A stretch of 64,000 nt of DNA from Macrostomum lignano (GCA_002269645.1 NIVC01000260.1:558001-622000), one strand, 5' to 3'. Shown: positions 4,709 to 61,295, numbered from the stretch's first letter. Notes: generated by a model not told the origin, from the sequence alone. Numbers and translations are program-made.

Positions 4709-5441
4709 TCAGTGCACGCGGAACTTGACCCAGTCGGCGCTCGTCTCGATCTCCTCGTCCACCTGAGCGTCGGTGAACAGCAGCAGGCGGCAGGCTCTCA
4801 GCTTGCTGTTGTACAGCACGTGTCTGCAGCTGGCCGCACGCATGCCAGCTGTCACGCAGTGCATTGCATTCTTCACCTGCAGCAGGTCAGCGTGGCAGTA
4901 CTCGGAGCTCGGGTTGTAGCTGGTGCGCTTGAACGGAGTGCAGCCACAGTTGGCCAGAGGCAGAGCGAGGCTGAGCTGCCCCAACGAACTCGCAGGCGAA
5001 GCCGCACAGTTCCGAGCAGACGTTGTCAGACAGCTTCCCGACCGCGTCATTGTACTGCCCGATGCAGTCCTGGTTGCCTCCGCTGTTGTTTGGATCGCCT
5101 GTTCGCCACAGGGAGTCATTCAGAGGCAGAATGCCCTTGCCTTTCACCAGCTGCCAGCCCGACCTGCTCGTGCCTCTCTCCTCAGCCAGGTCGGACACTC
5201 CGAGCCAGATGTTGCAGCTGCAGTTGAGACTCGGCATGCTGCCCAGCAACTGCAGCGAGCTGTGCGAGTTGAGCAGCTCGCCTCCGATCGATGCGCAGTG
5301 CCGATTCGCTGAGCACCAGGTGGAGCTCTGAGCTGTGCTCACGAACACGCATTTGCCGGCCTCGAGGCTGAACGGAGCGGGGCACGCGGTCAGCTGGGCC
5401 TGCACTGGCGTCAGCTGCCTGCTGTGCAGCAGGGTTAGCAT
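4709..5441 (-). pseudogene. C-type lectin + PAN/apple-like secreted protein, copy 1 (one frameshift)
   Basis: CPAPF...WCSANRHC...WLG...DPNN...DC...C...FACE lectin domain in ORF 4887-5558. The C-terminal domain (CRHVLYNSKLRACRLLLFTDAQV) is in another frame (4709-5119). At ~4940 TGG CTG C ACT lacks 2 nt relative to paralogs (TGG CAG CGG ACT). Confidence 0.85.
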
Positions 5442-6479
5442 AATTATAATGATTTTATTTTGCATACTGCCATTTTGCTTCTTTAACTTAGAAAAATATT
5501 TAAATTTTTGCGACCACGATATTTGGCACTGCAATTTTGTTTCGCGTTCGGGCTCCACCCAGTATAAGCACTATTTATTGAAAAACCCAGCCAAGGATAA
5601 GGTTCACTGAGTCGATTGATCCATACCTCAAGTCGTCGTCATCGCTTAAGAGTTTCCCCACGAATGCTATAATTTATTTCCATCAGTACTCCATTCAATA
5701 GAAGTTTTTCTACAGCCAAGCAGGAAGATCGGTATCAAGCGCGCTGAAGCGGAAATACGGAAAGTCGTCAGAATTTCCACAGGGTTTTTCCGTTACTACG
5801 GATGCAATGCAATACAATAGATGTAGGAATTACGACCGCGCTAATGCAGCAAATGGTTTACACTGTTTCTTCAGAATAGAAAGCACTGTAGTGTTTCAAA
5901 ATAGCAAATGCAAGCACTGAGGCGGTACACAGGTACACATAATTTTTTCCTGGTACGAATTCGCTGTGGCTAACTACAGTTAAACCCGATTGCTCTGATG
6001 AATTGCTGCAGCAGTAGCAGAGAATGCATGTCTAACCCGAGGAACCGGCCTTTATCATCTGTGCGTGGCTTCGTCTGCCACAAAACAATGTGAGACATTT
6101 GCATTGACACCAAATGCGTATAGAATATATTCTTCCTCATCTTAAAGCTTGTGAGACACGAGGGATTTTCTGCAAGAGCGACTGGGGTACCAGTGAGTTT
6201 ATTACTATATAAACTACATTTCCTGTATCTAAAATTCATAAAAATGCATGACACAACTCGAATCTTTGGTTTTTATGAATCTATCTTATCATCTCTGTTA
6301 CAAATATTTGTTACACAGTCAGCTAAGAATGATAAAATAGACTCATAAAACCAAAGAGCCGCGCTGTGCCATTTCAATGGTTTTTAGGCACAAGACACGT
6401 GCAAATGTACGTAGAATAAAAATTCACATAGAATCCTAATTTTCTTAACGAAAAGCTCCATGAATATCGATAGAGCAAT

Positions 6480-6580
6480 AAGAAAGGCACAACTTATCAA
6501 AAGATGAACACTGGATTTGCCTCCTATCAAAAGCAATAACAATTTTTGTGCTGAAAAAATGAAAACTTCCTATCTCCGTG
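6480..6580 (-). repeat. Dispersed repeat; inverted copy of ~896-988
   Basis: GGCACAAC..ATCAAAAGATGAACA..GCAATAACAATT..GTGCTGAAAA..GAAAACTTCCTATCTCC is the reverse complement of the segment inside the foldback spacer. Confidence 0.75.
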
Positions 6581-11453: not shown

Positions 11454-14400
11454 ATGGTTCTAAAAGCTATCCTGGAAGATACCTACAACTTGATGAAAGT
11501 AATTAAGCGAGGTCGCGAAGTAGTTTCTGGTGTAAGTTTCTATTCCTAGAGACTTTATGTTGATTTTTACCTGTTGTCTAGTGATCTGCTCACTGATACC
11601 TGTAGTGACAAATATTCTACCTATTATTCGTGCTGTGTGGTTGTGTGCCCCCTACATGTGTGGCGCACTTTAAGAGACATTGTCATACAACAGGCGAGAG
11701 GCATTACTGCCCATTTCTCTGACTCTGAGCGGGCACACATGCGCGCGGATACGTACGCAGGTCATACACACAGGCACACACTCGCACAGGATTGTACAGC
11801 GGCCCTATAACTTTATATTATCGTTAGGCATGTACACCTCACTGTGCCTTGGGGGTTGGCCCTCAAGGCCGTTAATTGCACGAGCAGAGCCAAGCCGAGA
11901 TTCCAATTTAGCCACAGATTAATGTAACTGCACTTGGAATCGAGCCTGGGCCGCTGGCACATCAGAGCGCGGCGCGACACCACTCAAACCACTGGGCTAC
12001 GGCCCCCTCCCCAACAGGGAGCCCCCTGTACGTGTGCATTGTCTATGCTGGTTTCCTTTGTTCCTCACTCCGCAGAGCATAGCCGAAAGAATTTGCGACT
12101 CGTACAAGCAGCTCAGTCTGGCTGAGAAGGAGACATTCTTCAACATGCTGGTGTCAGATCATGGCGTTGCGGAGACAACCAAAATCGGCATTACATTGGA
12201 CAGGGTAAGATGCTTATTTATTGGGTTTATAACGCCCCAACGCGTGTCATGTGTCATTTTTGGGTAGTGAGATGAGAGATTTTTGGGGAGTGAGATGAGA
12301 GATTTTAGGGGAGTGAGATGAGAGATTTTAGGGGAGTGAGATGTGGGACATTTTTGGGGAGTGAGATGGAATATTTTTGGGGATTGAGATGTGGGACATT
12401 TCTAAGGAGTGAGATGAGAGGTTTCGGGGGTGATATAGGAAATCTTTTAGGGAGTGAGATTAGAGATTTTTGGAGAGTGAGATGTGGGAGATTTTTGGGG
12501 AGTGAGAAGAGAGATTTTTTGGAGGGAGTGAGATGAGAGATTTGGGGGTGAGATGAGATTTTTTTGGGAGTGTGATGAGATATTTTTGGGTAGTGGGATG
12601 AGAGATTTGGGGGTGAGATAAGAGATTTTTGGGAGTGAGATCAGAGATTTTGGGGAGTGAGATGAGAGATTTCTGTGAAGCGGACAGAGTAAGGGTTATT
12701 TACTGAGTTTATAGCGTGTATGATGACGCATCGACTTAAATCTCAGCCAATTATACTCGTATTTTCATCTTGCCCGCAGTCAAATCCTGTGGAGAGCATT
12801 CAACGCCTGCAGAATCTGCGCCACATCACCCAGCCGCAGTTTGCCGGGCTGTTTCGCGTGCTCGGCAAAGCCCAAGGTGGAGTGAAGTTCATGGTTAATA
12901 TGCGCACTGATCTGAGCAAACTCACTGGCAAATCTACTGTAGAAGCTACTCCAGCTGTTGTCCCAGTGATCGACCACGAGCTCAAACAGCTGCTGTCTGT
13001 GTGGTTCAGCTCGGGTCTGTTTCACCTGCAACGGGCTACCTGGGAGTCGCCGAGTAGGCTGTTGGAGAAGGTGAATTTTTCTATGTTCTTCTAGAATTTT
13101 CTTCTATGCACTACATATCGGTAGGCTATTTTAGTAGGCATCGCAAAATGTACAGTAGGTTTTTTATAATTTAAACTTTGGCGCTAAAATTAATGTTGAA
13201 GATGGGAGATTTTTGGAGAGTGAGATGGGAGATTTTTGGAGAGTGAGATGGAAGATTTTTGAGGAGTGAGATAAGAGAGATTTTTGGCGAGTGAGATGGG
13301 AGATTTTCAGAAAATGAGATTTGAGATTTTTGGGAAGTGAGATGAGAGACATTGGGGAGTGAGATGTGAAAATAAATGATTTTTGAAGGATTCGCTTCAG
13401 ATTCCTTCCTTGCTACTTATTAGTAGATAATCACTTACTAAGCACGATTGAATTCCCTACCCTAACCTCGCTGTCAGGTGGCCGCTAGCGAGGCTGTCCA
13501 CCCGATCCTTGGCTGGCAGGATCTCAAACGTCGTGTTGGCGCCTACAAACGCTGCTTCGTGTTCACGCATCCCTGCCTGCCCGGCGAACCGCTGGTCATT
13601 CTTCACGCCGCACTGCTGGAGAATGTGGCCGACACCATGGAGAAAATTGTGCCAGCACTGTTTGAGCACATGCCTGATAGTGTGGAGGATCCCGCCAGGG
13701 TTAAGGTTTGCACTTTCTGGAAAGTGATTTTGAGGCAACAGATGGATGATTTTGAGGGAATAAGATGGATGATTTTGAGGGAACAAGATGGATGATTTTG
13801 AGGGAACAAGATGGATGATTTTGAGGCTACAAGATGGATGATTTTGAGGGAACAAGATGGATGATTTTGAGGGAACAAGATAGATGATTTTGAGGGAACA
13901 AGATGGATGATTTTGAGGGAACAAGATAGATGATTTTGAGGGAACAAGATGGATGATTTTGAGGCTACAAGATGGATGATTTTGAGGCAACAAGATGGAT
14001 GATTTTGAGGAAATGATGGATGATTTTGAGGGAACAAGATGGATGATTTTGAGGAAATGATGGATGATTTTGAGGGAACAAGATAGATGATTTTGAGGGA
14101 ACAAGATGGATGATTTTGAGGCTACAAGATGGATGATTTTGAGGGAACAAGATGGATGATTTTGAGGCAACAAGATGGATGATTTTGAGGCAACAATATG
14201 GATGATTTTGAGGGAATAAGATGGATGATTTTGAGGAAATGATGGATGATTTTGAGGGAATAAGATGGATGATTTTGAGGGAATAAGATGGATGATTTTG
14301 AGGGAATAAGATGGATGATTTTTAGGGAACAAGATGGATGATTTTTAGGGAACAAGATGGATGATTTTGAGGGAACAAGATGGATGATTTTGAGGGAACA

Positions 14401-20225: not shown

Positions 20226-20439
20226 GCTGCCGCTTGGCGTGCTTTTCTATGAATTTCTAAGAGTTACTAGTAACAACTTGTTTTTTTACTTTTGTTTCGT
20301 TTGCTTTTTGTTGCTGCGCCCGATTTAAATAACTGTCCGGAAATATTCCACATTTTGGAGAAATTTTCGAAAAATTTAGTATTGCTGTGCCTGCTTCCGG
20401 CCAGTTACCCCCCCCCCCACAGGCAAGTGAGTGAGCTGT

Positions 20440-20482
20440 GTCTATCTGTCTGTCTGTGTGTGTGTCTGTCTGTCTGTGTGTG

Positions 20483-20545
<63 letters not shown>

Positions 20546-20652
20546 GTCTGTCTGTCTGTGTGTATGTCTGTCTATCTGTCTGTCTGTCTGTCTGTGTGTA
20601 TGTCTGTCTGTCTGTCTGTCTGTCTGTCTTAGTGACTGTCTGTCTGTCTGTG

Positions 20653-20707
<55 letters not shown>

Positions 20708-20985: not shown

Positions 20986-21037
<52 letters not shown>

Positions 21038-21150: not shown

Positions 21151-21151
<1 letters not shown>

Positions 21152-28985: not shown

Positions 28986-29705
28986 TCAGACCAGGCGGAA
29001 CTTGACCCAGTCGGCGTTCGTCTCGATCTCCGCCTCCACCTGAGCGTCGGTGAACAGCAGCAGGCGGCAGGCTCTCAGCTTGCTGTTGTACAGCACGTGT
29101 CTGCAGCTGGCCGCACACATGCCAGCAGCTGTACACTCGATGACGCTATCAATGTTTTTTGCATCTTCGAAGCAATAGTAGGAGTTGTTGTAATTCGCTG
29201 GGTCAAAGCGGGCGGCCGTCCAGGTTCGATCAGCTTGGGGTCCAGTTTTGTTCACGAACTCGCAGATGAATCCATAATTTTTCCAGCATTCTCTTGTAGC
29301 GATCTTTCCATCAGGTTTTATTCTTAGACAGAATTCTTCATAGTTGTCACTCAGCCCTCTGAGCAGAGTGCTGTCATCCGGAAAGATGCCGTTGCCATTG
29401 ACCCTCTGCCATCCAGCCGTACTCTTGCCTCTGTAGTCTGCCAGCTGGCTGAGTCCGATCCACAGGTGGCAACTGCAGGATGAGCTGATGCCGCTGCTAC
29501 TCAGTGCCAGGATGGAGCTGTGCGAGTTAACGAGCTCGCCTCCGATCGATGCGCACTGCCGATTGGCTGAGCACCAGCTGTGGCTGTGAGCTGTGCTCAC
29601 GAACAGGCACAGACCGGCCTGCATGGTGAACGGTGCGGGACACAGCAGGGCCTGCGACTGCAGCAGCTGGCAGCTCAGCAGCAGCAGCAGCAGCAGCGCA
29701 AGCAT
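28986..29705 (-). CDS. C-type lectin + PAN/apple-like secreted protein, copy 2 (intact, 239 aa)
   Basis: Signal peptide MLALLLLLLLSCQLLQSQA, lectin cysteines and WIGL, and the conserved C-terminal domain in one open frame. Confidence 0.88.
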   Translation of the reverse strand: MLALLLLLLLSCQLLQSQALLCPAPFTMQAGLCLFVSTAHSHSWCSANRQCASIGGELVNSHSSILALSSSGISSSCSCHLWIGLSQLADYRGKSTAGWQRVNGNGIFPDDSTLLRGLSDNYEEFCLRIKPDGKIATRECWKNYGFICEFVNKTGPQADRTWTAARFDPANYNNSYYCFEDAKNIDSVIECTAAGMCAASCRHVLYNSKLRACRLLLFTDAQVEAEIETNADWVKFRLV

Positions 29706-31236: not shown

Positions 31237-32032
31237 TCAGACCAGGCGGAACTTGACCCAGTCGGCGTTCGTCTCGATCTCCGCCTCCACCTGAGCGTCG
31301 GTGAACAGCAGCAGGCGGCAGACTCTCAGCTTGCTGTTGTACAGCACGTGTCTGCAGCTGGCGTCACTTATGCCAGCAGCTGTACACTCGATGGCACTTC
31401 TCACATTCGGCCGCCTTCCGGTCGCCGGTACTGGGTTTAGAGTTTGTCAGAATCCCGAACTCGCAGATGAAGCCGAGCTGACAGCCGCAGTCCCTGTCGG
31501 ATAGCTTTCTGTCGGGTTTCTACCGAAGGCAGTATTCAATTGGCTCGCCAAGCTGACTGAAGAGAGTGCTGTCCTCGGGAAATACCCTGCTGCTGACTGA
31601 AGAGAGTGCTGTCCTCGGGAAATACCCTGCTGCTGACTGAAGAGAGTGCTGTCCTCGGGAAATACCCTGCTGCTGACTGAAGAGAGTGCTGTCCTCGGGA
31701 AATACCCTGCTGCTGACTGAAGAGAGTGCTGTCCTCGGGAAATACTCTGCTGCCGTTGACCCTCTGCCAGCCGGCCCTGCTGCAGCCTCTCATCAGCCAG
31801 GTCGCTCACTCCGATCCACAGGTCGCAGCCGCAGTCCGCAGTTGAAATTTCTCCGTCAACAATCAAATTCGCTTGATCGAGTCGCACGATTGCTGCTTAA
31901 ATGAGTACCAGTCGCTTGTCTGAGCAGTGCTCAGAAACAGGTGCACTTTCCGGCCTAGAGTCGGATGGGACCTGGGCACATCAGAGGTAGCAGAAGCAAC
32001 AGCAGAATCGTGTACAATGATTTAGTGGCCAT
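31237..32032 (-). pseudogene. C-type lectin + PAN-like copy 3 (nonsense codon, deletions, internal 40-bp tandem amplification)
   Basis: MATKSLYTILLLLLLPLMCPGPIRL then TAG where paralogs have E of EAGKC; CGCDLWIGVSDLADER and the conserved 3' block are retained; five 40-bp repeats at ~31553-31752. Confidence 0.85.
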
Positions 32033-34210: not shown

Positions 34211-34930
34211 TCAGACCAGGCGGAACTTGACCCAGTCGGCGCTCGTCTCGATCTCCGCCTCCACCTGAGCGTCGGTGAACAGCAGCAGGCGGCAGGCTCG
34301 CAGCTTGTTGTTGTACAGCACGTGTCTGCAGCTGGCGTCACTCATGGCGGCTGCAACGCACTCAACAGCGCTGCTCACATGCGGCACTTCGGTGAAGCAG
34401 TACTCGGTGTTGTAGGTGGCTCTCTTGAACGACACCTTCTTCCAATTGGCGAGCTTCCGGTAAGCAGAGGGGTCCTTGTACTCGCAAGCGAATCCATAGT
34501 TACGGTTGCAATAGACGTCTCTGAGCAATCCGAGTTCGTTCATCCGAATGCAGTTTTCATCAGCACCTCCGGATGGTTCGCTTGTGTAAAACAGACTTTC
34601 AGGACTGGCGAAGCCGTTTCCGTTGACCCTCTGCCAGCCGGCTCTCTTCTTGCCTCTCTCATCGGCCAGGTCGCTCAGTCCGAGCCACAGCTGGCAGCTG
34701 CAGGATGAGCTGATGCCGCTGCGATTCAGTGCCAGGATGGAGCTGTGCGAGTTGAGCAGCTCGCCTCCGATCGATGCGCACTGCCGATTAGCTGAGCACC
34801 AGCTGTGGCTGTGAGCTGTGCTCACGAACAGGCACAGACCGGCCTGCATGGTGAACGGTGCGGGACACAGCAGGGCCTGCGACTGCAGCAGCTGGCAGCT
34901 CAGCAGCAGCAGCAGCAGCAGCGCAAGCAT
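34211..34930 (-). CDS. C-type lectin + PAN/apple-like secreted protein, copy 4 (intact, 239 aa)
   Basis: Complete ORF with signal peptide, WLGLSD, EPS..ENC, C..NYGFACE and the C-terminal domain. Confidence 0.9.
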   Translation of the reverse strand: MLALLLLLLLSCQLLQSQALLCPAPFTMQAGLCLFVSTAHSHSWCSANRQCASIGGELLNSHSSILALNRSGISSSCSCQLWLGLSDLADERGKKRAGWQRVNGNGFASPESLFYTSEPSGGADENCIRMNELGLLRDVYCNRNYGFACEYKDPSAYRKLANWKKVSFKRATYNTEYCFTEVPHVSSAVECVAAAMSDASCRHVLYNNKLRACRLLLFTDAQVEAEIETSADWVKFRLV

Positions 34931-39816: not shown

Positions 39817-40533
39817 TCAGAGCAGTCGGAACTTGACCCAGTCGGCGCTCGTCTCGATCTCCGCCTCCACCTGAGCGTCGGTGAACAGCAGCAGGCGGCA
39901 GGCTCTCAGCTTGCTGTTGTACAGCACGTGTCTGCAGCTGGCGTCACTCATAGCGGCTGCAATGCACCTCATGGCGCTGCTCACATTCGGCACATCGGTG
40001 AAGCAGTACTCGGTGTTGTAGGTGGCTCTCTTGAACGACACCTTCTTCCAATTGGCAAGCTTCCGGTAAGCAGAGGGGTCCTTGTACTCGCAAGCGAATC
40101 CATAGTTATGGCTGCAGTTGGCGTCTCTGAGCAGCCCCAGATGGTCCATTCGAATGCAGTTTTCGTCATATCCTGACGGCTCGTATTCGTAAAACAGATC
40201 AAAGGGAGGGTCAGCGAAGCCGTTTCCGTTGACCCTCTGCCAGCCGGCTCTCTTGTTGCCTCTCTCATCGGCCAGGTCGCTCAGTCCGATCCACAGCTGG
40301 CAGCTGCAGGATGAGCTGATGCCGCTGCGATTCAGTGTCAGGATGGAGCTGTGCGAGTTAACGAGCTCGCCTCCGATCGATGCGCACTGCCGATTGGCTG
40401 AGCACCAGCTGTGGCTGTGAGCTGTGCTCACGAACAGGCACAGACCGGCCTGCATGGTGAACGGTGCGGGACACGGCAGGGCCTGCGACTGCAGCAGCTG
40501 GCAGCTCAGCAGCAGCAGCAGCAGCACAAGCAT
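39817..40533 (-). CDS. C-type lectin + PAN/apple-like secreted protein, copy 5 (intact, 238 aa)
   Basis: Complete ORF; closest paralog of copy 4. Confidence 0.9.
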   Translation of the reverse strand: MLVLLLLLLSCQLLQSQALPCPAPFTMQAGLCLFVSTAHSHSWCSANRQCASIGGELVNSHSSILTLNRSGISSSCSCQLWIGLSDLADERGNKRAGWQRVNGNGFADPPFDLFYEYEPSGYDENCIRMDHLGLLRDANCSHNYGFACEYKDPSAYRKLANWKKVSFKRATYNTEYCFTDVPNVSSAMRCIAAAMSDASCRHVLYNSKLRACRLLLFTDAQVEAEIETSADWVKFRLL

Positions 40534-48634: not shown

Positions 48635-49341
48635 TCAGTGCAAGCCGAACTTGACCCAGTCGGCGCTCGTCTCGATATCCGCCTCCACCTGAGTGTCGGT
48701 GAACAGCAGCAGGCGGCAGGCTCTCAGCTTGCTGTTGTACAGCACGTGTCTGCAGCTGGCCGCACGCATGCCAGCTGTCACGCAGTGCATTGCGTTCTTC
48801 ACCTGCAGCAGGTCAGCGTGGCAGAACTCGGAGCTGGGGTTACGCTGCGCTTGAACGGAGTCCGCTGCCACAGTTGGCCTGACGGAGACCTCAGTGTTGC
48901 TTTATCGACAAACTCTCAGACTAACCCAGCCAGATTCAGAACTTGAAGAAGACAACACAGCAACGCAGTCCTGGTTGCCGTCTTGGTTATCAGGCTCAGC
49001 CGATGCCCACAGCGAATTGTCCAGCGGCAGGATGCCGTTGAAACTGGCCAGCTGCCAGTCCGACCTGCTCGTGTTTCGCTCATCGGCCAGGTCGGACACT
49101 CCGAGCCAGACCCAGCAGTCGCAGGCGAGTGTCGGCAGTAGCAGAGCCAGCTAGCTGTGCGAGTTGAGCAGCTCGCCACCGATCGATGCGCATCGCCGAT
49201 TCTCTGTGCTCAAGAACACGGCATTGGCCAAACTCGATGCTGAATGGGCTGGGGCAGGACTGGGTCCGCACCAACAGCAACTCGCAACTGCTCAAGCAGC
49301 CCAGAAGCAGCAATACCAGAGGGCACAAAGCTCTGATTCAT
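48635..49341 (-). pseudogene. C-type lectin + PAN-like copy 6 (several frameshifts and deletions)
   Basis: Fragments CPSPFSIEFGQC, SDLADERNTSRSDWQL..EPDNQDGNQDC and CHADLLQVKNAMHC...WVKFGLH lie in different frames. Confidence 0.85.
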
Positions 49342-49688: not shown

Positions 49689-50754
49689 TGACTAACCAGG
49701 GTTGAGGCTGGCTGAAAAACAGCTGCTAGTTTAGCCTTGCTAGTCGACGTCTGCTAGCTTCGTGAAATCAACTCTCCCACCCTCGGCACCCAATCTGACC
49801 TGCTAGCCATAGACAGCTAGACGCTGCTACTGGCTTGGGAGCCAGTCGCTTTGAAAATTATCGAAGAGGCCCCAAACGCTTTAGATTTCGAGACCCGGAT
49901 GTTTCTAGGGCTATATTTTATTCTAGATCCCGATACCAGACTGTACAGATGCGAGCCGAGCAGAAAAACAAGCGCACAGACAATTAGAAACTGAACAGCC
50001 TTTGTGTGCCCCATCATCACCTGCAGTGTTGATGGGCTTGTTCAGTAATATTTCTGTGTGGCTAAACTTATTCGCAAGCTGTTCAATATAAATTTGACAG
50101 TCAGAGTTACTGTACATTTGCAGATTGCCTGTAAACGCTACTACTCACCAAGCTGAGATGCATGATCTGAACATTGTTCAATAGTTTAAGGCCGGAAGTT
50201 CAACAGTTGAATTCGAGGTCTGTCGCAGCTTGAGGAGTTACTAGTAAATTCTGGTGCTCCCACAAGCAAGCAAGTTTCAGAAGCTTTTGCTTCACTTGAT
50301 CTGCGAACTGCTTGGCTTGTTTTTCTGAGAATTGATAATAACTACTAGTAAAAAGTGTCTGAAAGAAAATAAAAAACTGAAGATTGCCGTGCCTGCTTTC
50401 GGCCAATGGCGTCCAACCTCCCAAGGCACGTAGAGTGAGTGAGCAGCATGCTCAGTTTTCCATTTGCATTTAGAGCTGAACTGGGGCGGTCCTGCTTGCC
50501 TGCTCAGAATTCCGAAGGCGATTTGTTTGTCTATGCAGATGGACTGATGGGAGAAATACGCTCGTACAATGCGAATGTTATTAACTTATTTCAGGTTCAT
50601 ATATTGACATTTAAGCTCCGGTTTCAGCTGCCTATTTTCATGCAGCCTGACCAGGGTTTTCCGCTCCAGGATTAATAGCATTCGCTCAAATTTTAGCAAT
50701 AAAGGCTGCGAATATTTCCATGTCGGTTTTTGCAGTCAGTCCATCTTACATGTA

Positions 50755-52612
<1,858 letters not shown>

Positions 52613-52699
52613 GCGTACTGGAGGGAGTCGTGCCAGAGTTACGACGCAGGATGGAGAAATTTAAAGTTGTTTAAACTGGAATAGAATATGTCGAGTCGC

Positions 52700-52845: not shown

Positions 52846-54248
52846 GTATAACTCGCACAACCTAAGAAGACGGTAAAGCAAACTTAAATTACAAAGTTGG
52901 AAACAATTGAAATGGTTTTAATTTTTTTGAAAAATATGCTATATAACTTTGGAGTTGTTTTGGTCTCAGTTGGATCGGTGAAAACTGCTTAGAGACGACT
53001 GCAGAAGTGCTCGGAGATTAGGGGTCATCTGCTCAGGGATTACGCAAAAAAGTGCTGGTGAACCATTGCTAAACTGTAGAAACCAAGGGCTGTCAATGGC
53101 GAGCTTAAACAAAAAAACAGTAGACACTAGACATCCAGACCAGCCAGACTATTGGAAACTCGTCGACTGGGTATTTAAGTTTCAGTTTTTTCATACATAT
53201 AAAAATCAACAGAAAATGATCAACTCTTTAGGACTGCTAGACAGCTCACGGAGTACTGCAGAATCGCATTCTCTTCATGACAAATGCACTGAGAGCTTTA
53301 GCAACAACAGAAAGGTAAATAAAAAGGAAGAAAAGCGCTTTGAGCGTCTTTACTTGTTTTGCAAGCATCGATATTTGCGTAGGAATTTATTTGTTCGCTG
53401 GCTTCTGCTTACTCACCTGTAAGTGGCTTTTAAAAGGCTGATGTAACAAAACTTTTATGCCATAGCAACGCGGACTGGTCGCAAATCAGATACTCGTAAA
53501 TTCCCGACTGTCTACAATGGAAGAGTTTTTTGGTAACTGCGTGCTCTTTGTCTGTGCTCAACATTTAGCGACAATATAATGCAAGTGCTTCTGATTTTAA
53601 GTGCTCAACTGCTCTGGGCTTCAGCTCAGCCGTGCCCCGCTCCGTTCCACCTCGAGGCCGGCAAGTGCCTATTCGTGAGCACAGTTCAGAGCCGCACCTG
53701 GTGCTCAGCAAATGAGCAGTGCAAATCTATCGGAGGCGAGCTCGTCAACTCGCACGACTCCATCAAGCTGCTACTCGGTCGAAATATTTCCAGTGCCAAC
53801 TGCGGCTGCGACCTGTGGATCGGAGTGAGCGACCTGGCCGATGAGAGAGGCGGCAGCAGGGCCGGCTGGCAGAGGGTCAACGGCAACGGCCTGCTCCCGG
53901 ATGACAACTCCATGTACTTATCATACAATCCTACTGGCTCAACAGGAGAAAACTGCCTGCGCATCAGGAGGGATGTCACTCTTGGTGACAAAAGGTGCCA
54001 CTCTGTTCTCGGCTTCGTGTGCGAGTTTGTGAGTGAGACAGCCCGGCACCCTGCTACCGGAGTTTGGAAGGCCGCTGACTTCAAGCGAGAGCTGCACCAC
54101 TCTGTGTACTGCTTCAGCGATGTGCCGAATGTGAGCAGCGCCATGAGGTGCTTGACTTACTTGACTTAGCTGCAGGGCTGTCCCGGAGGGGACACAGCGG
54201 GAAGGCGCGGGCGCCCATTCCGCTAGTCCCTGAACGGCCGACGCGTCG

Positions 54249-57200
54249 CTATGGACGGAGGGTTGGCGCCGCCCAGGGAGGTCCCCCAGTGTCGCCAGCA
54301 GCTATGGTGCTCTCTGGAAAGGAGAGTTCAGCCCTGCGGGTGGCCCGAAGGTAGCGCATGAGCTGATTAAAGTTTTCGGGTTTGCACGCTTCAGTAATAG
54401 ATGTGTGTGGCCCGAGGTAAGTGAGTCTGGCCCGCGTGAAGGCGGGACAGATGCTGACGAAATGCTCAGCGGTTTCGTCACCTGAGTTGCAGAAACTACA
54501 GGTGGCGTTGGTGGCGTTGCCCTGCAGGTACTGGTGCCTGGAGAAGCAGCCGTGACCAGAGAGGGTCATGGTGGCAGCCCGGATGTCTCTGCGCGAGAGG
54601 CGCAAGAGGAGCTTCCGGAGCTGGTGAGAGGGCTGAGGGACAGCGCCTCTGGATTGCCTGCAGTTCGTGCGGTTCGCCCAAGTCGAGCGGTGCTGAGTCC
54701 TGATCCACGCTTTGATGCGCGAGTCGATGACACAGCCAGGAATCGGGACAAGAGGTTCGGGGCCGAGAGAGGAGCCGGAGGCACCAACTTTTGCAAGGGT
54801 GTCAGCGAACTCATTTCCTCGGATCCCCACATGCCCCGGAACCCACTTAAGGGTAATTTTGTTGGCGGAACCCAACACATTGAGGAGTTTGATACAGTCA
54901 AGGACTGTAGCAGAGTTGGTGCTGCAGCCACTGATGGCGTGCAAGGCAGCTTGGCTGTCCGAATGGAAAATGATGTTCTTACCAGTAACGCCAGTGGCGA
55001 GAAGCTCTGCAGTGCAGGAGCTGATGGCCAGAACTTCATTTTGAAAACACTGGAGTTGACCCCAGTGTATTGAGCGTGGGTAGCGATGACCCTCCCGTTC
55101 AGAAAGATTCCAACACCAAAGCCGGTGTTGGCTGACTGCTTAGAACCGTCGGTGTAGCAATGAAGCTCACCAGGGTTCCAATGGTCATTGATGTTATCGC
55201 GCGAGTCGATAGCTACGGAGTAGCGCTGTCTCAGGTTGAGCGTTGAGGCAATGCCATCGGTGAAGACGCGATTGGCCTGACACTCGTTGAGAAAGTTGAG
55301 GCACAGATCGCTATGCGGGACAAGGTTCCGCTTAGCAGGTGCTCTCATGTAAATGAATTTGACGCCGGCATCAATTAGACGCCGCGTCGTTCTAGCCGCC
55401 TCACCCCTGATGAAGAGGTCAAGAGGCGGAAGATTAAGAAAGGCCCCCATGCCAGCAAAGGGCGTGGACCTGGTGGCGTTGCAGATGAGCCTACACGCTC
55501 TGCCTTGGATCGTGTTGAGCAGGTCTGCATGGCTTTTGACCTGGGTAGCGCTAACCCAGACAACAGAGGCGTACGTAATGGCAGGTCTAACTACGGAAGT
55601 ATAGATCCACCAAAGCCGCTTTGGGGATAGACCCCAAGAAGTGCCAAGTGCTCGTCGGAGCTGGGCCAGGATGGCTGAGGCACGCTTAGCTTTTGCTTTC
55701 ACGTGGAAGGACCAGTTGAGCCGGTGGTCAAGTGTGACCCCGAGACATCTGGTCTGGTGCGCGAAGGCAATATCTCTGCCGTAGAGCTGCAGAGGACGTA
55801 TGTTCCAGCGTAGTCTGCTGGTAAACATAATGGCAACGGTTTTGGGCTCAGAGAGTTCCAAACCATTGTCATTGGCCCAGGATTCTGCTTTGCGGATAAA
55901 GCTCTGCATCAGATCCCTGAGCGTGCTGGGAGACGGTCCTGCCACAATGGCCGTGACGTCATCAGCATACCCGACTTTGAAGACGGGGTCAGGTCGGGAG
56001 TCACTCAGAAGAGCGTCCATGACCAGGTTCCAGAGCGTCGGGGTGAGGACTCCGCCTTGGGGTCCACCCTTACAGACTCTGGTGGAGGCAGTTTGCCCAA
56101 GAAGTTGGGCAGTGACCGTACGGTTGGAGATCATGTACATGATCCACCGTATGAGGGTAGCATGAGCTTTGCGATTTTGAAGGGCCCTCTGAAACGCTTC
56201 AAAGATAACGTTGTCGAAGGCGCCAACAATGTCAAGAAAGAGAGCCAGGGCGTAACCGTCACCCAGTACCGCCCGTTCAATCTTTTCGACAATCGCATGC
56301 AGGGCGCTGTCAGTCGACCTCCCGGTACGGAAGGCGTGCTGATTATTGCTGAGGGGCATCGCTGTCAGCTCGCAGGAGAGCAGCCGCCAGAGAATAAGCC
56401 TCTCAGTGAGCTTAAGCATTGCTGACGTTAAGCTAATTGGCCGGAAGGCCTTGACGCTTTGGTAGTCACCCTTCCCAGGTTTGGGAATAAAGACTACTCG
56501 AGCTTCAGTCCAGCTTTTGGGAACGTATCCCAGCTGGATAGAGGCCCGCATAAGATTGCGGGTGAGTCTCAGGAACGAGGGTATCTTGGCTGCTTCACGA
56601 AGGAGAACAGGGTAGATACCATCAGGTCCAGGAGATTTGAAGGGTTTGAAGGTTCTGACCGCACGAGCGATTAGGTCTTCAGTGACAATGCCCGCCGCTA
56701 GGGTGGCTCCATCCATCGAATGGTTGGGCTCCGGTCTAGCAGTAGGTACCCTCGGGAAGAATGTGCTAAGCATATGCTGAAGCACTTCTTCAGGGTCTTT
56801 AGTAAGAGAGCCATCATCTTTTTTGATCATGGCTAATTTGGACATTTTGTCCATTGTAAGGGCCTTGACAAGCCTAGAAGTAGGTCTGTCTTGATCCAAT
56901 TCATTGCAGAATTGGCGCCACTTACATTCCTTGGCCTTGCGCACTTCAGATTTGAAATTGCGGGAGGCTTGCCGGAAAAGCTCCATGTCCTCCGGGTTTC
57001 CGGTCTTCATGGCACGGCGATGAAGGCTTTTGGCCTTCCGCCTGAGTTTCCCCAGCTCCGGGTTCCACCACGGCGCCGAGGTCTTGCCTCTGTAGGCGCG
57101 AGCAGGACAAGCCGCTTCGTAGGCTGCAATAATGCAACCTGTCAGCGTCTCAGCCATATGATCCACATCCTCGCAGGTCTCAATCGGACGTAAGTCCGTG

Positions 57201-57988
57201 AGTTCCTGCAGGTGCAGATCAAGGGCAGCCTTGTAGGCCGCCCAATCAGTGTTGCGGATATTGCGTCTCCAAGTGATCGGAGACTGGGTTTTAGTGTCCG
57301 CGATATTAAAGGCAATAAAGCAGTGGTCAGACAGGGAGGGCTCCTCAGACCAGACTCTCCACTCCTTGACTCTGTCAAAGAGTCTTGGGGTAACGAGTGT
57401 GGCGTCGAGGACCTCGGTCCATCTGCCATTATTAAAGGTAGGAGTGCTGCCGCGGTTGCAGAGCATGAGGTTTGTGTTAGAGATGAGGGCCAGAAGCTCC
57501 TCTCCTCTAGTGTTGGTATCTTTGCTGCCCCAGTGCTTGTGGTGCGCGTTGAGGTCGCCCCCTAAGCACAGCTCAGCGTTCTGGGACTCGCAGTACTGCG
57601 CAAGGCGCAGTAAACTCTCGGGAGCAGGGTCTCTGTCGCCTGGGATATAAACCGAGGCAACAAGACACGTACGCGGAGAGAAATGATTAGATTGGATGAC
57701 GCAAAGGTCTCCATCAGAGAGATCAGTCCTCAGCCAAGCCTGGAGATGGCTAGCAGCGAGGATAGCCGCTCTAGGGCGGCTGTTCCCCGGGCCACACACA
57801 TAAAAATCAGAGTAGCCAGAGGGAATGTTGGGCAACTTACCGTTGCGCATCCAGGGTTCCTGGATCAGGATGAGGCCTGGCCTGTACAGCTCAGCAATCT
57901 TCATCAGATTTACTGACGCAGATACGCAATGCTGTAAATTTATTTGCAGACAGAATGTCGCTCCTTTGGCAGCGTGGAGCTTAGTCAT
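54249..57988 (-). CDS. LINE ORF2: APE endonuclease, RT, RNase H and CCHC finger (one -1 frameshift at ~55045)
   Basis: QINLQH, LIQEPW, GGDLNAHH, LSDH; FLDIVGAFD, PQGGVLTP, YADD; YTDGSK, DSQAAL, KWVPGHVGIRGNEFAD; CSFC..ETAEHF..C. Adding one C (TTC CAA AAT GAA) restores FQNEVLAI. Confidence 0.92.
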
Positions 57989-58011
57989 ACTGTATTAAAT
58001 GCAATATCTGG

Positions 58012-59588
58012 CTAGAGCCCAGGGTCATCAAGGAGACTTGGACAACAGATCGTCCTCGTCCCAGGCCGCTGGGGCTTGACTGGGAGATGGGAGTTGGTCG
58101 ACGTCCATGGCCTCCTCACCCCCACCGGCCCCCCAGCAGACTCCTCAGGCTCCGATGACAGGATGGAGGAAGCTTCCTCACCTGCATCTTTACCTTCAGA
58201 CCCCACCAAGGTGGCCGAGGAGAGCTCGGATTCCGAAGACCCGGCCTCGTCCTCAACTCCTTCTCCGACTGGCAGGTTTGGTTCCCGGGGCTCGGCCGGA
58301 GCCGTTACCGCGGTCGCCGAACTGCTGCTAGCAGAGGGGCGAGATGCAGCTTTGGCTTTGGGATCGGCTTGCGCCTTTCCTTGGGCCTTAGACTGCGCCC
58401 CGCTCTTGCCGGAGATGCCGGGGTTGGCAGTAGCCTTCCCTTTGGCAGACTTTCCTCGGCGCAACTTGAGCTTGAGGGCACCCAGCTGGAAAGAGGATCC
58501 ATTAGGGTACCGACTCGCCCAAGTGCTGGAAAGGCCGAGGACAATTGAGTTGCCCGTCTCCCCCCTGCGGACTTTACGGTGATACACCAGTCCACTAGCA
58601 GGGAGGTCGGGGTTCAGACGCAGTAGGACCCGGCGAATAACGTCTGGTCCAGCTGCGGTGCTCTTAGCAGGGACGAAAACCACATAGGGTATCGTCTTTG
58701 GACGCTGGCCCTCGCGAAGAAAAAGAGCTCCACCAAGGTCAGCATCCAAGGAGACCGTCGGTAGCCGCTGGAGCAGCCGCCGAGCGTCCTCCTCGCTGCT
58801 AGGAGCAATAAGAACGAATGTGCTTCGCAGCACCATCCGCTCAACGCCGATGGAGATTCCCTCCTCGACAGTCAGCTCAACAGATAGGAGTCAACAGCAC
58901 TCCACACTTTTTGAAGCTGATCAGTGGTCCAGTCCTGGTCGCGACCTTGGATGATCACTCCCGGGATTTTGGCCTTGGCCTTCGCCGCAAAGGTAGCTCC
59001 CGAAGGAACCTCCTTGTTGGCAGTGGCCATTTGTTGCGCCGTGGTTTCGGCCTCAGCAGCCGCGGCAGCAGCTCCAGGGAGCGCCGCCGCTGAACTACTG
59101 GAGCTTCCACCGGCCGGCCCGCCTGGTTGCCTTGGGACTCCAGTCGCTTCAGCATCCATGGTGGACGCCGCCGCTTTGGCCCCCGCAGCTCCCTTCTTGG
59201 CCTGCCTTTTGGCGCGTTGTTTAGCGCGTTTGCGCTCAAGCCGAGCCCGCTGAGCTTCATCGGATCTGCCAGATTTGGCCGGTCCTTTAGGCTCAGAGCT
59301 CGCGGTTCCCTTAGATCCACCAGCGGAGCTGGCAGGTCTTAGGGTGTTTTGAGTTTGGTAGCTCTGGTCGGATCTGCCAGCAGAGCCAGCCGGTCCTTCC
59401 TTTGCCACAGTTGAATCAGTCGGTTGGGATCTGCCAGCAGGGCCGGCCGGTCCTTCGGACTGAGGTTGGGGTTTAGAAGGGTCCCCATCCCTAGAAATAG
59501 CTTGTTTATCCATAGTCGGCTCGAAGGCCATGATAGAAGGTTGGTGGGCTACCCTCAAAGGGGCGCGGTACCCACCCGGCCGCTCCAC
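58012..59588 (-). CDS. LINE ORF1 (one frameshift at ~58875)
   Basis: A basic, low-complexity N-terminus (ERKRAKQRAKRQ). ORFs 58872-59588 and 58012-58836 join if one G is added (TTG GAG CTG); the ORF ends 24 nt before ORF2. Confidence 0.7.
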
Positions 59589-60562
59589 CTGACCGGGCAG
59601 TAGGCCAATAGCACCCTCAAGGCTGGCCCGACACCAGGAGGGGGACCGCTTGCGACCGGACTACTCCCCGGCCTTCCAGCCCATCGGCACGGTCAACACC
59701 TTAGGCATTAGAGAGTACGTTGAGCAGTACCACGGCCTGCAGGTTGGCGAGCCAGACCCGCATACCCAAATTCGGCCGAAGCCACTGGATAGGGTCGCCA
59801 GCGCCGGAGCCCAGTCTGTCCAGCAGCCCTAGGGACTGCCTTGAACACACGCGGGGACGAGTACCCTGGGTCGACTTGCGAGACAGCGTGGGGGGGGGGT
59901 CTGCGGCTGCCAGAGGCAAATAGAGGGTGCAGACCTCCCACCAGCCTTGACCTGCTGAAGATAGGGGCAGGCGTGAAGCATCGCAGACCTTAGCCCATGG
60001 GCCTAGTCTGTCTCATACTTCACTGGCATGCTGAATACGCCTTCGCGTGCGCCATGAGGTGCACTGCAGCCGGCATGCGTGCGGCCAGCTGCAGACACAT
60101 GCTGTACAACAGCAAGCTGAGAGCCTGCCGCCATGAAGCATATGAAGCACATGAGGCATAAGAGGGCTTAGCTCTATTAATATCAGGTGTCATCCATGTC
60201 TTGCTGGTATTTGAAATCAAGTTCCTAGGCCTCATGTTACTTTTTTAGTGCACGATCCCTTGTTAGACATCGGGTATGTTTCCCGTGACAACTACTACTA
60301 TAGACAGCGACTGTCACCTTCAGAAATTCCAGTCGTCACGTACTGACGTACTGACGAACTCACGTACTGTATGCGAACCAAGGCAATGACTGAATGGTTC
60401 CTGGTCAATAACAGTTGGTTTGAAACTATTGATATTAATTGCTCCGAATTTTGGAAACGTGGCAATTAACCTAAACCGCTTCACTTGAAAACTACGTTCA
60501 TGTAGACCAGCTAAGTGCCTACTTTATAACCGTAATACTAGGTAATTTATTGTTAGAATCAA

Positions 60563-61295
60563 ATGAAGTCTCTGCTGCTCCTCTGCATCCTGAGTTGTCA
60601 GCTGCTCTGGGCGTCAGCTCAGCCGTGCCCCGCTCCGTTCCGCCTTGAGGCCGGCAAATGCGTGTTCGTGAGCACAGTTCGAAACTATAGCTGGTGCTCA
60701 GCGAATCGGCAGTGCGCATCGATCGGAGGCGAGCTGCTCAACTCGCACAGCTCATTGAAGCTGCTAAGCAGCATGCCGAGTGTCAACTGCGGCTATTTGC
60801 TTTGGCTCGGCCTGACAGACCTGGCCGAGGAGAGAGGCAGGAGCAGGAGGGGCTGGCAGAGTCAACAGCAACGGAATCCTGCCACTGGACAATGCCCTGT
60901 GGGCTTCGGACGACCCTAACAACGAAGGCGGCAATCAGAACTGCATTACTCTGTCAGCTTCAGGCTTTCGAATGTTTTATCTGCACTGCTCAGGCCTGGC
61001 TGGATTTACCTGCGAGTTTGTCGGCGGACTGATATCGCAACCTCTGTCAAGCAGCTCATGGCGGTGGACTCCGTTCAAGCGCACCAGCTACAACCCCAGC
61101 TCCAAGTTCTGCCACGCTGACCTGCTGCAGGTGAAGAACGCCATGCACTGCGTGGCAGCCGGCATGCGTGCGGCCAGCTGCAGACACGTGCTGTACAACA
61201 GCAAGTTGAGAGCCTGCCGCCTGCTGTTGTTCACCGACGCTCAGGTGGAGGAGATGATCGAGACGAGAGCCGACTGGGTCAAGTTCAGCGTGTAG
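60563..61295 (+). pseudogene. C-type lectin + PAN-like copy 8 (one 2-bp deletion at ~60860)
   Basis: CAG A GTC AAC versus CAG AGG GTC AAC in paralogs; correcting it gives one frame through DDPNNEGGNQNC...GFTCEF...WVKFSV. Confidence 0.85.

What the first reader, a model, noticed from the sequence alone, without database searches (positions are those of the whole stretch)
5020..60990. Diversity is concentrated at the lectin sugar/Ca2+-binding site
At the EPN/QPD position the copies read GDPNN (1), LSDNY (2, motif lost), SEPSG (4), YEPSG (5), AEPDN (6), YNPTG (7) and DDPNN (8). The WND-equivalent reads LSDNV, IATRE, LRDVY, LRDAN, LGDKR and FYLH. The flanking Cys/Trp framework is fixed, so each paralog may bind a different ligand.
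Basis: partly seen in the sequence, partly recalled or inferred. Interest (0 to 1): 0.7.

Follow-up and report, generated by a model that had tools for sequence, protein, structure and literature searches.

The report
Flatworm lectin gene cluster, mosaic evolution
The window holds eight tandem copies (only three clearly intact) of a flatworm gene for a secreted lectin-like protein. The copies differ most in the loops that would contact a ligand, but silent DNA changes pile up there just as much, so the pattern reflects copy-and-paste homogenisation of the gene ends, not proven selection for new binding specificities.

Summary
A profile alignment to the DC-SIGN lectin domain confirms that they occupy the EPN and WND positions. 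They belong to eight single-exon copies of a gene encoding a signal peptide, a C-type lectin-like domain (CTLD) and a PAN/apple domain. The best match (85% identity) is a Macrostomum lignano protein.

Only c2, c4 and c5 are intact:
- c1 and c8 each carry one 2-bp frameshift.
- c7 is split by a 5.9-kb LINE with a 13-bp target-site duplication.
- c3 and c6 are decayed.

Diversity is concentrated, but in a roughly 100-codon central block (binding loops, linker, first half of PAN), not only at the binding site. Silent divergence tracks replacement divergence. pS is 0.48-0.79 in the loops and 0.00-0.13 in the 3' end. pN/pS stays at or below 0.9 in the variable central block and reaches or exceeds 1 only in three sparse-count windows in the near-identical 3' end.

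Significant conversion tracts and switching nearest neighbours show partial concerted evolution: gene conversion homogenises both gene ends and leaves an old divergence island over the loops. No copy keeps the five canonical Ca2+-site ligands (at most three). Different ligand specificities remain plausible but are not demonstrated. This is an ordinary kind of lineage-specific lectin expansion in an apparently undescribed CTLD-PAN architecture.

The parts
4709..5441 (-). c1: CTLD-PAN copy with DPN / LSD at the EPN / WND positions. One 2-bp deletion in the linker (around 4940) shifts the PAN domain out of frame. This is either a recent pseudogene or an assembly error.
28986..29705 (-). c2: intact 239-codon ORF. 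The EPN-equivalent is lost (LSD..) and WND-equivalent reads ATR. It is a mosaic: the 5' part is 93-100% identical to c4/c5, the middle ~450 nt of the A1 alignment (columns 300-745) is at most 77% identical to any copy (47-52% in the loop/linker core), and the 3' 140 nt is 99% identical to c3.
31237..31978 (-). c3: decayed pseudogene with several frames and stops. A 40-bp x5.1 tandem repeat at 31552-31753 lies inside the loop-coding part. Its 3' 140 nt is still 99% identical to c2.
34211..34930 (-). c4: intact 239-codon ORF with EPS / ENC / LRD. The loop-coding part is about 34508-34627.
39817..40533 (-). c5: intact 238-codon ORF with EPS / ENC / LRD. Codons 191-203 are identical to c7, a short conversion tract.
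48635..49289 (-). c6: pseudogene of the c1/c8 type, with EPD. It has no start codon, a 24-bp deletion, in-frame stops and frameshifts. The WND region and a framework Cys are lost.
53579..54169 (+). c7, 5' part: signal peptide, CTLD (NPT / ENC / LGD) and the first third of PAN. The reading frame ends 5 codons into the inserted element.
54152..60049 (-). Non-LTR retrotransposon (ORF2 with endonuclease and reverse transcriptase at 54566-57988) inserted in the PAN domain of c7. It is flanked by a 13-bp target-site duplication, CGCCATGAGGTGC, at 54139-54151 and 60050-60062.
60050..60131 (+). c7, displaced 3' fragment (AMRCTAAGMRAASCRHMLYNSKLRACR). The last ~25 codons are missing.
60563..61295 (+). 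c8: copy with DPN / FYL. It has one 2-bp deletion (around 60860) and Cys->Tyr in the CxC pair. Probably a recent pseudogene.
34214..34350 (-). Example, in c4, of the ~135-nt 3' tract (second half of PAN) that is 90-99% identical in all eight copies, pseudogenes included (in c7 only the first third survives). A 27-mer from it occurs exactly 8 times in the window.

Best explanation
This is a tandem, partly inverted cluster of eight paralogs in a Macrostomum-type flatworm. They belong to a lineage-expanded family of small secreted proteins made of a signal peptide, a long-form C-type lectin-like domain and a PAN/apple domain.

The family evolves by partial concerted evolution. Short-tract gene conversion between copies, pseudogenes included, keeps the 5' half of the lectin domain and especially the last ~135 nt of the gene nearly identical. 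A central segment escapes homogenisation and retains old divergence that is saturated at silent sites. That segment encodes the long-loop region (the ligand-contact face of the lectin fold), the linker and the first half of PAN.

The apparent hypervariable binding site is therefore an island of old divergence between homogenised flanks. The island may persist because selection keeps functionally distinct loops apart and rejects conversions there. It may also persist simply because diverged sequence no longer supports conversion. The proteins most likely act as secreted pattern or ligand binders whose specificity lies in the loops, but not through the canonical Ca2+/EPN-WND sugar site.

Shown: copy structure, damage to copies, fold, mosaic divergence and conversion tracts. 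Inferred: the cause of the island and any ligand-binding function.
For: Family and fold:
- Pfam Lectin_C scores above threshold in all four copies tested (26-34 bits against a cutoff of 22.6).
- PAN_1 matches 27 of 45 family members (best E 4.8e-7).
- The AlphaFold model of c4 has pLDDT 90.6 and pTM 0.87. Its TM-score to the DC-SIGN CRD is 0.82-0.84, normalised by target.
- 196 representative proteins match at E<1e-10, many of them ~240 aa with the same architecture.

Mosaic divergence:
- Regional Nei-Gojobori pS: loops 0.48-0.79, linker 0.49-0.91 (apart from c4-c5, where the linker is near-identical at 0.11), CTLD N-half 0.05-0.47, PAN C-half 0.00-0.13.
- c1-c2 have 0/36 silent codon differences in the PAN C-half against 13/48 in the CTLD N-half (p 4e-4).
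- c4-c5 have 10/30 silent codon differences in the loops against 7/164 elsewhere (p 2e-5).
- pN/pS is about 0.5-0.9 across the variable central block (0.28-0.87 in the 5' half) and shows no peak in the loops.

Recombination:
- A PHI-type test gives p<=0.0005.
- A GENECONV-type run test finds significant tracts for c7-c5 (codons 191-203), c2-c5 (24-69) and c2-c4 (23-45), each p<=0.0005, and for c1-c8 (p 0.0025).
- Nearest neighbours switch along c2 and c5.
- The decayed pseudogene c3 shares a 99% identical 3' end with c2.

Contrast with the wider family: entropy there is nearly flat across regions (2.07-2.57 bits). In the window it is 0.21 (PAN C-half), 0.56 (CTLD N-half) and 1.40 (loops). The contrast therefore comes largely from unusually uniform flanks.
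Against: - Silent-site saturation and alignment uncertainty in the loops make pS there imprecise.
- The PHI and run tests are my own implementations, and rate heterogeneity among sites can inflate them.
- Against the outside relative L001, the PAN C-half also shows somewhat lower silent divergence (15% vs 28% of identical-amino-acid codons, not significant). Some nucleotide-level or codon-usage constraint on that tract therefore cannot be excluded.
- Short-read polishing of a long-read assembly could artificially homogenise near-identical paralog segments.
- There are no expression or population data, so the functional status of any copy is inferred only from open reading frames.
Confidence: 0.7

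Rival explanations
1. One reading: diversifying (positive) selection on the sugar/Ca2+-binding loops drives each paralog toward a different ligand, while the framework is held by purifying selection.
For: - Amino-acid differences are significantly enriched in the loops in every pair tested.
- In the c4/c5/P0001 subgroup the variable positions directly flank conserved E-P-S, E-N-C and L-R/K-D.
- c2 keeps a ~135-codon ORF through a middle segment no more than 77% identical to any other copy. That argues c2 is still functional with a very different loop set.
- Population-genetic theory (established, not tested here) predicts that selection against homogenisation leaves an island of both silent and replacement divergence. 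A pN/pS below 1 therefore does not exclude this reading.
Against: - pN/pS never exceeds about 1 in the loops (0.23-1.06 pairwise; at most 0.90 in sliding windows).
- For the closest intact pair, c4-c5, omega in the loops (~0.27) is lower than in the flanks (~0.6).
- Silent divergence is equally concentrated in the loops.
- The linker and PAN N-half are as variable as the loops or more so.
- Five of the eight copies are damaged.
- No copy has a canonical Ca2+/sugar site.
Confidence: 0.2
2. Neutral explanation: the loops, linker and PAN N-half are simply the least constrained parts of the protein, and several copies are decaying pseudogenes. The variation has no functional meaning, and the island persists only because diverged DNA is a poor conversion substrate.
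For: - Window-copy entropy correlates with wider-family entropy, column by column (Spearman 0.51).
- The linker is the most variable region in both sets.
- c3 and c6 are decayed, c7 is disrupted by a LINE, and c1 and c8 are frameshifted.
- pN/pS of 0.5-0.9 in the central block indicates weak constraint.
Against: - c2, c4 and c5 keep full ORFs, the four canonical Cys, the cis-Pro (c4, c5) and a confidently predicted fold.
- c4-c5 loop omega is ~0.27, which indicates real purifying selection on the loops.
- In the wider family the loops are only 1.2-fold more variable than the core, against 2.5-fold in the window.
Confidence: 0.2
3. Cassette-type diversification: the conserved 5' and 3' tracts act as homology arms. 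Loop cassettes are moved between copies by directed gene conversion, with pseudogenes serving as donors. This could happen in the germline or somatically, as a programmed way of generating lectin diversity.
For: - All eight copies, including decayed ones, keep near-identical arms around a variable core.
- Short patches are demonstrably exchanged, for example c7-c5 codons 191-203.
Against: - The observed tracts homogenise flanks rather than shuffle loop cassettes.
- No two copies share a loop cassette.
- The pattern is fully explained by ordinary ectopic conversion in a tandem family.
- There is no evidence for somatic variation, and none can be obtained from a single assembly.
Confidence: 0.04
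4. Assembly artefact: the mosaic similarity and the single 2-bp frameshifts arise from collapsed or mis-polished paralogs in a repeat-rich, polyploid genome assembly.
For: - Both frameshifts, in c1 and c8, are losses of GG.
- The locus is full of satellites and transposons.
Against: - Eight distinct copies with distinct flanks and distinct loop sequences are resolved.
- The mosaic tracts (40-140 nt) are far shorter than any read-level chimera would produce.
- The independent M. lignano protein P0001 and the metagenome contig L001 carry the same conserved C-terminal segment.
Confidence: 0.05

Closest known systems
Ca2+-dependent carbohydrate-recognition domains of the DC-SIGN / CD23 / mannose-receptor type (C-type lectins in the strict sense)
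   Same: - Same fold: TM-score 0.82-0.84 to the DC-SIGN CRD and sequence-profile E 1.7e-10.
- Long-form N-terminal Cys pair, WIGL-type strand and the four canonical Cys.
- A Pro at the cis-Pro position of EPN in all copies except c2.
   Different: - No copy has EPN or QPD together with WND.
- At most 3 of the 5 Ca2+-site-2 ligand positions are retained (c4/c5: E, S, E, R, D; c2: 1 of 5).
- There are extra family-specific Cys (WC, CxC).
- A PAN/apple domain is fused at the C-terminus.
- The proteins are secreted, ~220 aa when mature, and have no neck or transmembrane region.
Lineage-specific tandem expansions of CTLD genes with variable binding loops (e.g. rodent Ly49/NKC receptors, snake-venom C-type lectin-like proteins, invertebrate clec/CTL expansions). 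This comparison rests on general knowledge and was not tested here.
   Same: - Tandem and inverted arrays mixing intact genes and pseudogenes.
- Gene conversion between members.
- The greatest divergence lies in the ligand-contact loops.
- Non-canonical variants of the EPN/WND motifs.
   Different: - The host is a free-living flatworm.
- The architecture is CTLD plus PAN.
- Positive selection is not demonstrable here.
- The homogenised tracts are unusually sharp, with 0-13% silent divergence next to saturated segments.
The unnamed CTLD-PAN protein family recovered here (P0016, P0023, P0029, P0032 and others, ~240 aa, from metagenome and transcriptome assemblies)
   Same: - Same order of signal peptide, CTLD and PAN, and the same Cys pattern.
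- Conserved C-terminal ...C.L.L(Y/F)TDA...W.KF.
- An E-P-x motif and a hydrophobic-x-D motif at the EPN and WND positions.
   Different: The window copies are only 21-32% identical to these proteins. They have a shorter linker and a Macrostomum-specific CxC pair. The taxonomic origin of the relatives is unknown, because the sources give no names.

Membership tests
C-type lectin-like domain superfamily (Pfam PF00059, CTLD fold) | Sequence match to the Lectin_C profile above the curated threshold | tested here: met
   c4 26.4, c1 28.5, c2 29.3 and c7 34.1 bits, against a cutoff of 22.6. 39 of 45 family members match.
C-type lectin-like domain superfamily (Pfam PF00059, CTLD fold) | CTLD fold with two helices, the beta2 WIGL strand, the long-loop region, and strands beta3-beta4-beta5 | tested here: met
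   The AlphaFold model of c4 has pLDDT 90.6. Foldseek matches CD23, SIGN-R1 and DC-SIGN CRDs at E ~1e-7, with TM-scores to the target of 0.71-0.84.
C-type lectin-like domain superfamily (Pfam PF00059, CTLD fold) | Conserved Cys framework: C0-C0' of long-form domains plus C1-C4 | tested here: met
   Present in c1, c2, c4, c5 and c7. c8 has Cys->Tyr only in the extra, Macrostomum-specific CxC pair, and c6 and c3 have lost framework residues.
Ca2+-dependent sugar-binding C-type lectins (CRDs in the strict sense) | EPN (mannose-type) or QPD (galactose-type) tripeptide | tested here: not met
   The window copies read DPN, (S-D), EPS, EPS, EPD (a pseudogene), NPT and DPN. A true EPN occurs only in the outside relative P0002/L001.
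Ca2+-dependent sugar-binding C-type lectins (CRDs in the strict sense) | WND motif, and all five Ca2+-site-2 ligands (E, N, E, N, D in DC-SIGN) | tested here: not met
   The WND equivalents read LSD, ATR, LRD, LRD, LGD and FYL. The Asn is absent from every window copy and from P0001/P0002, and the wider family alignment shows no conserved Asn there. At most 3 of 5 ligands are retained.
Ca2+-dependent sugar-binding C-type lectins (CRDs in the strict sense) | Measured Ca2+-dependent carbohydrate binding | not testable with these tools
   Needs recombinant protein, glycan arrays and EDTA controls.
PAN/apple domain (Pfam PF00024) | Profile match above the curated threshold | tested here: inconclusive
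   The window copies score 13.7-19.4 bits, below the 21.4 cutoff. However, 27 of 45 aligned family members match PAN_1 at E<0.01 (best 4.8e-7). The model shows a helix packed on a beta-sheet with conserved Cys. The C-terminal domain was not searched separately by structure.
Gene family under concerted evolution (ectopic gene conversion) | Silent-site homogeneity in tracts, phylogenetic incompatibility clustered along the sequence, and significant shared tracts | tested here: met
   pS is 0.00-0.13 in the PAN C-half against 0.48-0.91 in the centre (the c4-c5 linker, 0.11, excepted). PHI-type test p<=0.0005. Run test p<=0.0005 for three pairs.
Positively selected (diversifying) binding site | dN/dS above 1 at the variable loops | tested here: not met
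   Pairwise omega in the loops is 0.23-1.06, and the sliding-window maximum in the loops is 0.90. Codon site models were not run, because no such software was available and recombination would invalidate them.

The most novel reading that the evidence does not exclude
The conserved 5' and 3' tracts are functional homology arms of a cassette system. Intact and pseudogene copies exchange loop-coding segments by directed gene conversion, possibly somatically. This would give a flatworm a programmed way of diversifying secreted lectin-like recognition proteins, comparable in logic to snail FREPs or to pseudogene-templated immunoglobulin diversification in birds.
Probability: 0.04. Interest if true: 0.85.

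Novelty: new member of a known kind. Interest (0 to 1): 0.35.

Why it matters
Free-living flatworms have no described repertoire of diversified recognition lectins, and full-text searches found no paper describing the CTLD-PAN architecture seen here. This locus is a compact natural example of how gene conversion and divergence interact inside a 0.7-kb gene. It gives three intact paralogs (c2, c4, c5) with graded loop differences that could be expressed and compared.

It is also a caution for scans of this kind. "Variable loops in a fixed framework" looks like diversifying selection, but it can be produced by homogenised flanks. In kind, however, a lineage-specific lectin expansion with variable loops and pseudogenes is common in invertebrates.

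Tried and rejected
- Orthologous DNA for an unsaturated dN/dS estimate. No encoding contig is on record for the M. lignano proteins P0001 and P0003. The only outside DNA, L001, is itself saturated in the loops (pS 0.76).
- Exact look-up of c2, c4 and c5 in the protein collection: absent. The species of the window therefore stays "Macrostomum-like".
- A scan of JGI metagenome contigs for the conserved 27-mer found no hits.
- P0003 is a fused gene model (a ~530-residue unrelated N-terminal part plus a c1-like part). That N-terminal part is not in the window, so P0003 is a paralog elsewhere, not the allele of c1.
- Literature searches for CTLD plus PAN in flatworms, and for EPN, gene conversion and tandem arrays together, found no papers. 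The Macrostomum papers that mention C-type lectins concern adhesive proteins or an unrelated gut gene.
- Codon site models (PAML or HyPhy) were not run. The software was not available, there are only 6-7 sequences, silent sites are saturated and recombination is significant. Together these would make false positives likely.
- Mapping variable residues in 3D was not possible, because the structure tool returns no coordinates. Only secondary structure and confidence were used.
- I considered that c7 might be an intact CTLD-only gene. I rejected this as the default because the LINE with its target-site duplication shows a recent disruption. A truncated product is still possible.

Full report
WHAT IS THERE

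The window is eukaryotic in character: sparse ORFs, satellites, microsatellites and a LINE. tblastn with one copy finds eight homologous units. c1 to c6 lie on the minus strand, at about 4.7-5.4, 29.0-29.7, 31.2-32.0, 34.2-34.9, 39.8-40.5 and 48.6-49.3 kb. c7 and c8 lie on the plus strand, at 53.6-54.2 (plus 60.05-60.13) and 60.6-61.3 kb.

Each unit is a single open reading frame of about 239 codons. It encodes a hydrophobic signal peptide, a C-type lectin-like domain and a C-terminal Cys-rich domain:
- The lectin domain matches Pfam Lectin_C at 26-34 bits against a cutoff of 22.6.
- The C-terminal domain matches PAN_1 weakly in the window copies (13.7-19.4 bits, cutoff 21.4). It matches at E<0.01 in 27 of 45 aligned relatives, with a best E of 4.8e-7.

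The nearest named protein is a Macrostomum lignano "C-type lectin domain-containing protein", 85% identical to c4. The exact window proteins are not in the collection. The source is therefore M. lignano or a close relative.

STATE OF THE COPIES

Only c2 (28986-29705), c4 (34211-34930) and c5 (39817-40533) are intact. The other five are damaged:
- c1 has one 2-bp deletion in the linker (around 4940), which puts the PAN domain out of frame.
- c8 has one 2-bp deletion (around 60860) and a Cys->Tyr change in a family-specific CxC pair.
- c7 is interrupted in its PAN domain by a 5.9-kb non-LTR retrotransposon. The element's 1140-codon ORF carries endonuclease and reverse-transcriptase domains. The insertion is flanked by a 13-bp target-site duplication at 54139-54151 and 60050-60062. 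The displaced 3' fragment of c7 (60050-60131) is itself truncated.
- c6 has no start codon, a 24-bp deletion, in-frame stops and frameshifts.
- c3 is decayed and carries a 40-bp x5.1 tandem repeat inside the loop-coding part.

The c1 and c8 lesions could be assembly errors. This cannot be decided from the window.

ARE THE MOTIFS AT THE EPN AND WND POSITIONS?

Yes. A profile of the family aligns to the DC-SIGN carbohydrate-recognition domain (E 1.7e-10). The family's E-P-S falls under EPN, E-N-C under E-D-C, and L-K/R-D under W-N-D.

An AlphaFold model of mature c4, built with a 45-sequence alignment, is confident (pLDDT 90.6, pTM 0.87). It superposes on CD23, SIGN-R1 and DC-SIGN CRDs, with a TM-score of up to 0.84 normalised by target. 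EPS lies in the long loop, between the short beta strand after beta2 and beta3, and LRD lies on beta4, as in canonical domains.

No copy keeps the five ligands of Ca2+ site 2. In DC-SIGN these are E, N, E, N, D; that list comes from established knowledge of the structure. The window copies read as follows:

| Copy | Residues at the five positions |
|---|---|
| c1 | D, N, Q, S, D |
| c2 | S, gap, E, A, T |
| c4 and c5 | E, S, E, R, D |
| c7 | N, T, E, G, D |
| c8 | D, N, Q, F, Y |

The Asn of WND is absent from every copy here and from P0001/P0002, and the wider family alignment shows no conserved Asn at that position. The family consensus there is hydrophobic-x-D. A true EPN appears only in an outside relative, P0002 on contig L001. 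"Sugar/Ca2+-binding site" is therefore a positional label, not a demonstrated property.

IS DIVERSITY CONCENTRATED THERE?

Yes, but over a broader region. Amino-acid differences are enriched in the loops in every pair tested:
- c4-c5: 10/40 in the loops vs 14/178 elsewhere (p 4e-3).
- c2-c4: 27/39 vs 48/178 (p 1e-6).
- c1-c8: 24/43 vs 40/179 (p 5e-5).

At the DNA level, the loop segment (alignment A1 columns 380-560) has a mean pairwise identity of 0.45. The first 100 nt of the lectin domain has 0.78 and the last 140 nt has 0.83.

The variable block runs from alignment codon ~104 to ~207. It includes the linker, which has the highest entropy (1.73 bits against 1.40 for the loops), and the first half of PAN.

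WHY: SILENT SITES TELL THE STORY

Regional Nei-Gojobori estimates show that silent divergence varies along the gene as strongly as replacement divergence:

| Region | pS |
|---|---|
| Loops | 0.48-0.79 |
| Linker | 0.49-0.91 (0.11 for c4-c5) |
| N-half of the lectin domain | 0.05-0.47 |
| C-half of PAN | 0.00-0.13 |

In sliding 15-codon windows, pN/pS stays at about 0.5-0.9 across the variable central block, with no peak in the loops (maximum there 0.90). Elsewhere it ranges from 0.11 to 2.5, the extremes falling in the near-identical 3' end where the counts are too small to interpret.

Restricting the count to codons that encode the same amino acid in both copies removes any effect of protein-level selection:
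- c4 and c5 differ at 10/30 such codons in the loops against 7/164 elsewhere (p 2e-5).
- c1 and c2 differ at 0/36 in the PAN C-half against 13/48 in the lectin N-half (p 4e-4).

For the closest intact pair, omega is lower in the loops (about 0.27) than in the flanks (about 0.6).

The gene is thus a mosaic of old and young DNA. Recombination tests agree:
- A PHI-type test gives p<=0.0005.
- A GENECONV-type run test finds shared tracts for c7-c5 (codons 191-203), c2-c5 (codons 24-69) and c2-c4 (codons 23-45), each with p<=0.0005, and for c1-c8 (p 0.0025).
- Nearest neighbours switch along the gene. c2 is 93-100% identical to c4/c5 in its 5' third, has no relative closer than 47-77% across its middle (A1 columns 300-745), and is 99% identical to the decayed pseudogene c3 in its last 140 nt.
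- c5 carries a 13-codon (39-nt) patch identical to c7 where c4 differs.
- A 27-mer from the 3' tract occurs exactly eight times in the window, with 0-2 mismatches.

In the wider family, where conversion between lineages is impossible, entropy is nearly flat across regions (2.07-2.57 bits; linker 3.27). In the window it is 0.21, 0.56 and 1.40 bits for the PAN C-half, the lectin N-half and the loops. The striking contrast therefore comes mostly from unusually uniform flanks.

INTERPRETATION

The best-supported reading is partial concerted evolution. Ectopic gene conversion, in which pseudogenes also take part, homogenises both ends of the gene. A central island centred on the ligand-contact loops retains old divergence.

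Two causes of the island cannot be separated here:
- Selection keeps functionally distinct loops apart. Theory then predicts elevated silent as well as replacement divergence around the selected sites.
- Divergence blocks conversion, so the island perpetuates itself.

The three intact copies keep their framework and reading frames through very different loops, and c4-c5 loop omega is well below 1. This argues that the loops are functional and constrained, not free-drifting. Positive selection is not shown, and with saturated silent sites and recombination it cannot be shown from this window.

COMPARISON WITH WHAT IS KNOWN

- The fold and framework make these proteins members of the C-type lectin-like domain superfamily.
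- They fail the defining motif tests for Ca2+-dependent sugar-binding C-type lectins. They may work like lectins, but they should not be filed as canonical ones.
- Tandem CTLD expansions with pseudogenes, conversion and loop divergence are well known in other animals (general knowledge).
- I found no description of the CTLD-PAN architecture in flatworms. It is nevertheless widespread among unnamed proteins: 196 representatives at E<1e-10, many of them ~240 aa with the same layout.

VERDICT

This is a new member of a known kind and is of moderate-to-low surprise. Its main value is as a clean example of conversion-shaped mosaic divergence and as a set of three testable paralogs.

Noticed in passing
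window 13725-19110: A 5.4-kb satellite of a 23-bp unit (TGATTTTGAGGGAACAAGATGGA), 235.7 copies at 94% match, with very strong G-over-C skew. It generates many spurious long ORFs on the minus strand.
   Followed up: partly
window 20439-21151 and 50757-52612: Long tetranucleotide microsatellites, (TGTC)n and (TCTG)n. The second explains the 654-codon 'ORF' at 50720-52684, which has no Pfam match.
   Followed up: partly
window 26072-28184: Tandem array of a 32/60-bp unit, about 70 copies at 88% match, lying between the satellite region and c2.
   Followed up: no
window 22991-23926; 38821-39182; 40689-41851: A 151-bp tandem repeat (6.2 copies) with related copies elsewhere in the cluster, including an inverted pair at 40689-41198 / 41341-41851 just upstream of c5. 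It may be a mobile or recombinogenic element between the lectin copies.
   Followed up: no
window 54152-60049: An apparently intact non-LTR retrotransposon on the minus strand. ORF2 is 1140 codons with endonuclease and reverse-transcriptase domains. Two further ORFs at 58012-58836 and 58872-59588 have no Pfam match. It is flanked by a perfect 13-bp target-site duplication, so the insertion into c7 is probably recent.
   Followed up: yes
window 1952-2668 (+): ORF matching the rhodopsin-family 7TM receptor profile (7tm_1, E 1.2e-16). It is probably an exon of a GPCR gene next to the lectin cluster.
   Followed up: no
window 46467-47216 (+) and 42289-44283 (-): An RNase H fragment at threshold (E 1.3e-5) and a 664-codon ORF without any Pfam match lie between c5 and c6. 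They are possibly remains of other mobile elements.
   Followed up: no
window ~29725-29735, ~34950-34960, ~40550-40560, ~53555-53565 (upstream of c2, c4, c5, c7): A conserved TTT(T)AG motif lies 12-25 nt upstream of the start codon. It looks like a 3' splice acceptor, which would fit spliced-leader trans-splicing or a 5'-UTR intron. This is an inference only.
   Followed up: no
window 31552-31753 (-), inside c3: A 40-bp unit repeated 5.1 times at 99% identity. It amplifies exactly the segment that encodes the start of the long-loop region (..FPEDSTLFSQQQG..). The unit length is not a multiple of three.
   Followed up: partly
L001 1-967 (ENA metagenome assembly ERZ27315224): A contig with a full c1-like CTLD-PAN copy, 76% identical in DNA to c1. 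It carries a true EPN motif and E-D-C, but reads L-F-D in place of WND. No start codon is visible upstream of its lectin domain.
   Followed up: partly
window 1-234 and 1181-1498: Arrays of a 14-bp unit (GCCGACGTTTGCCA) in inverted orientation about 1 kb apart, at the left edge of the window.
   Followed up: no
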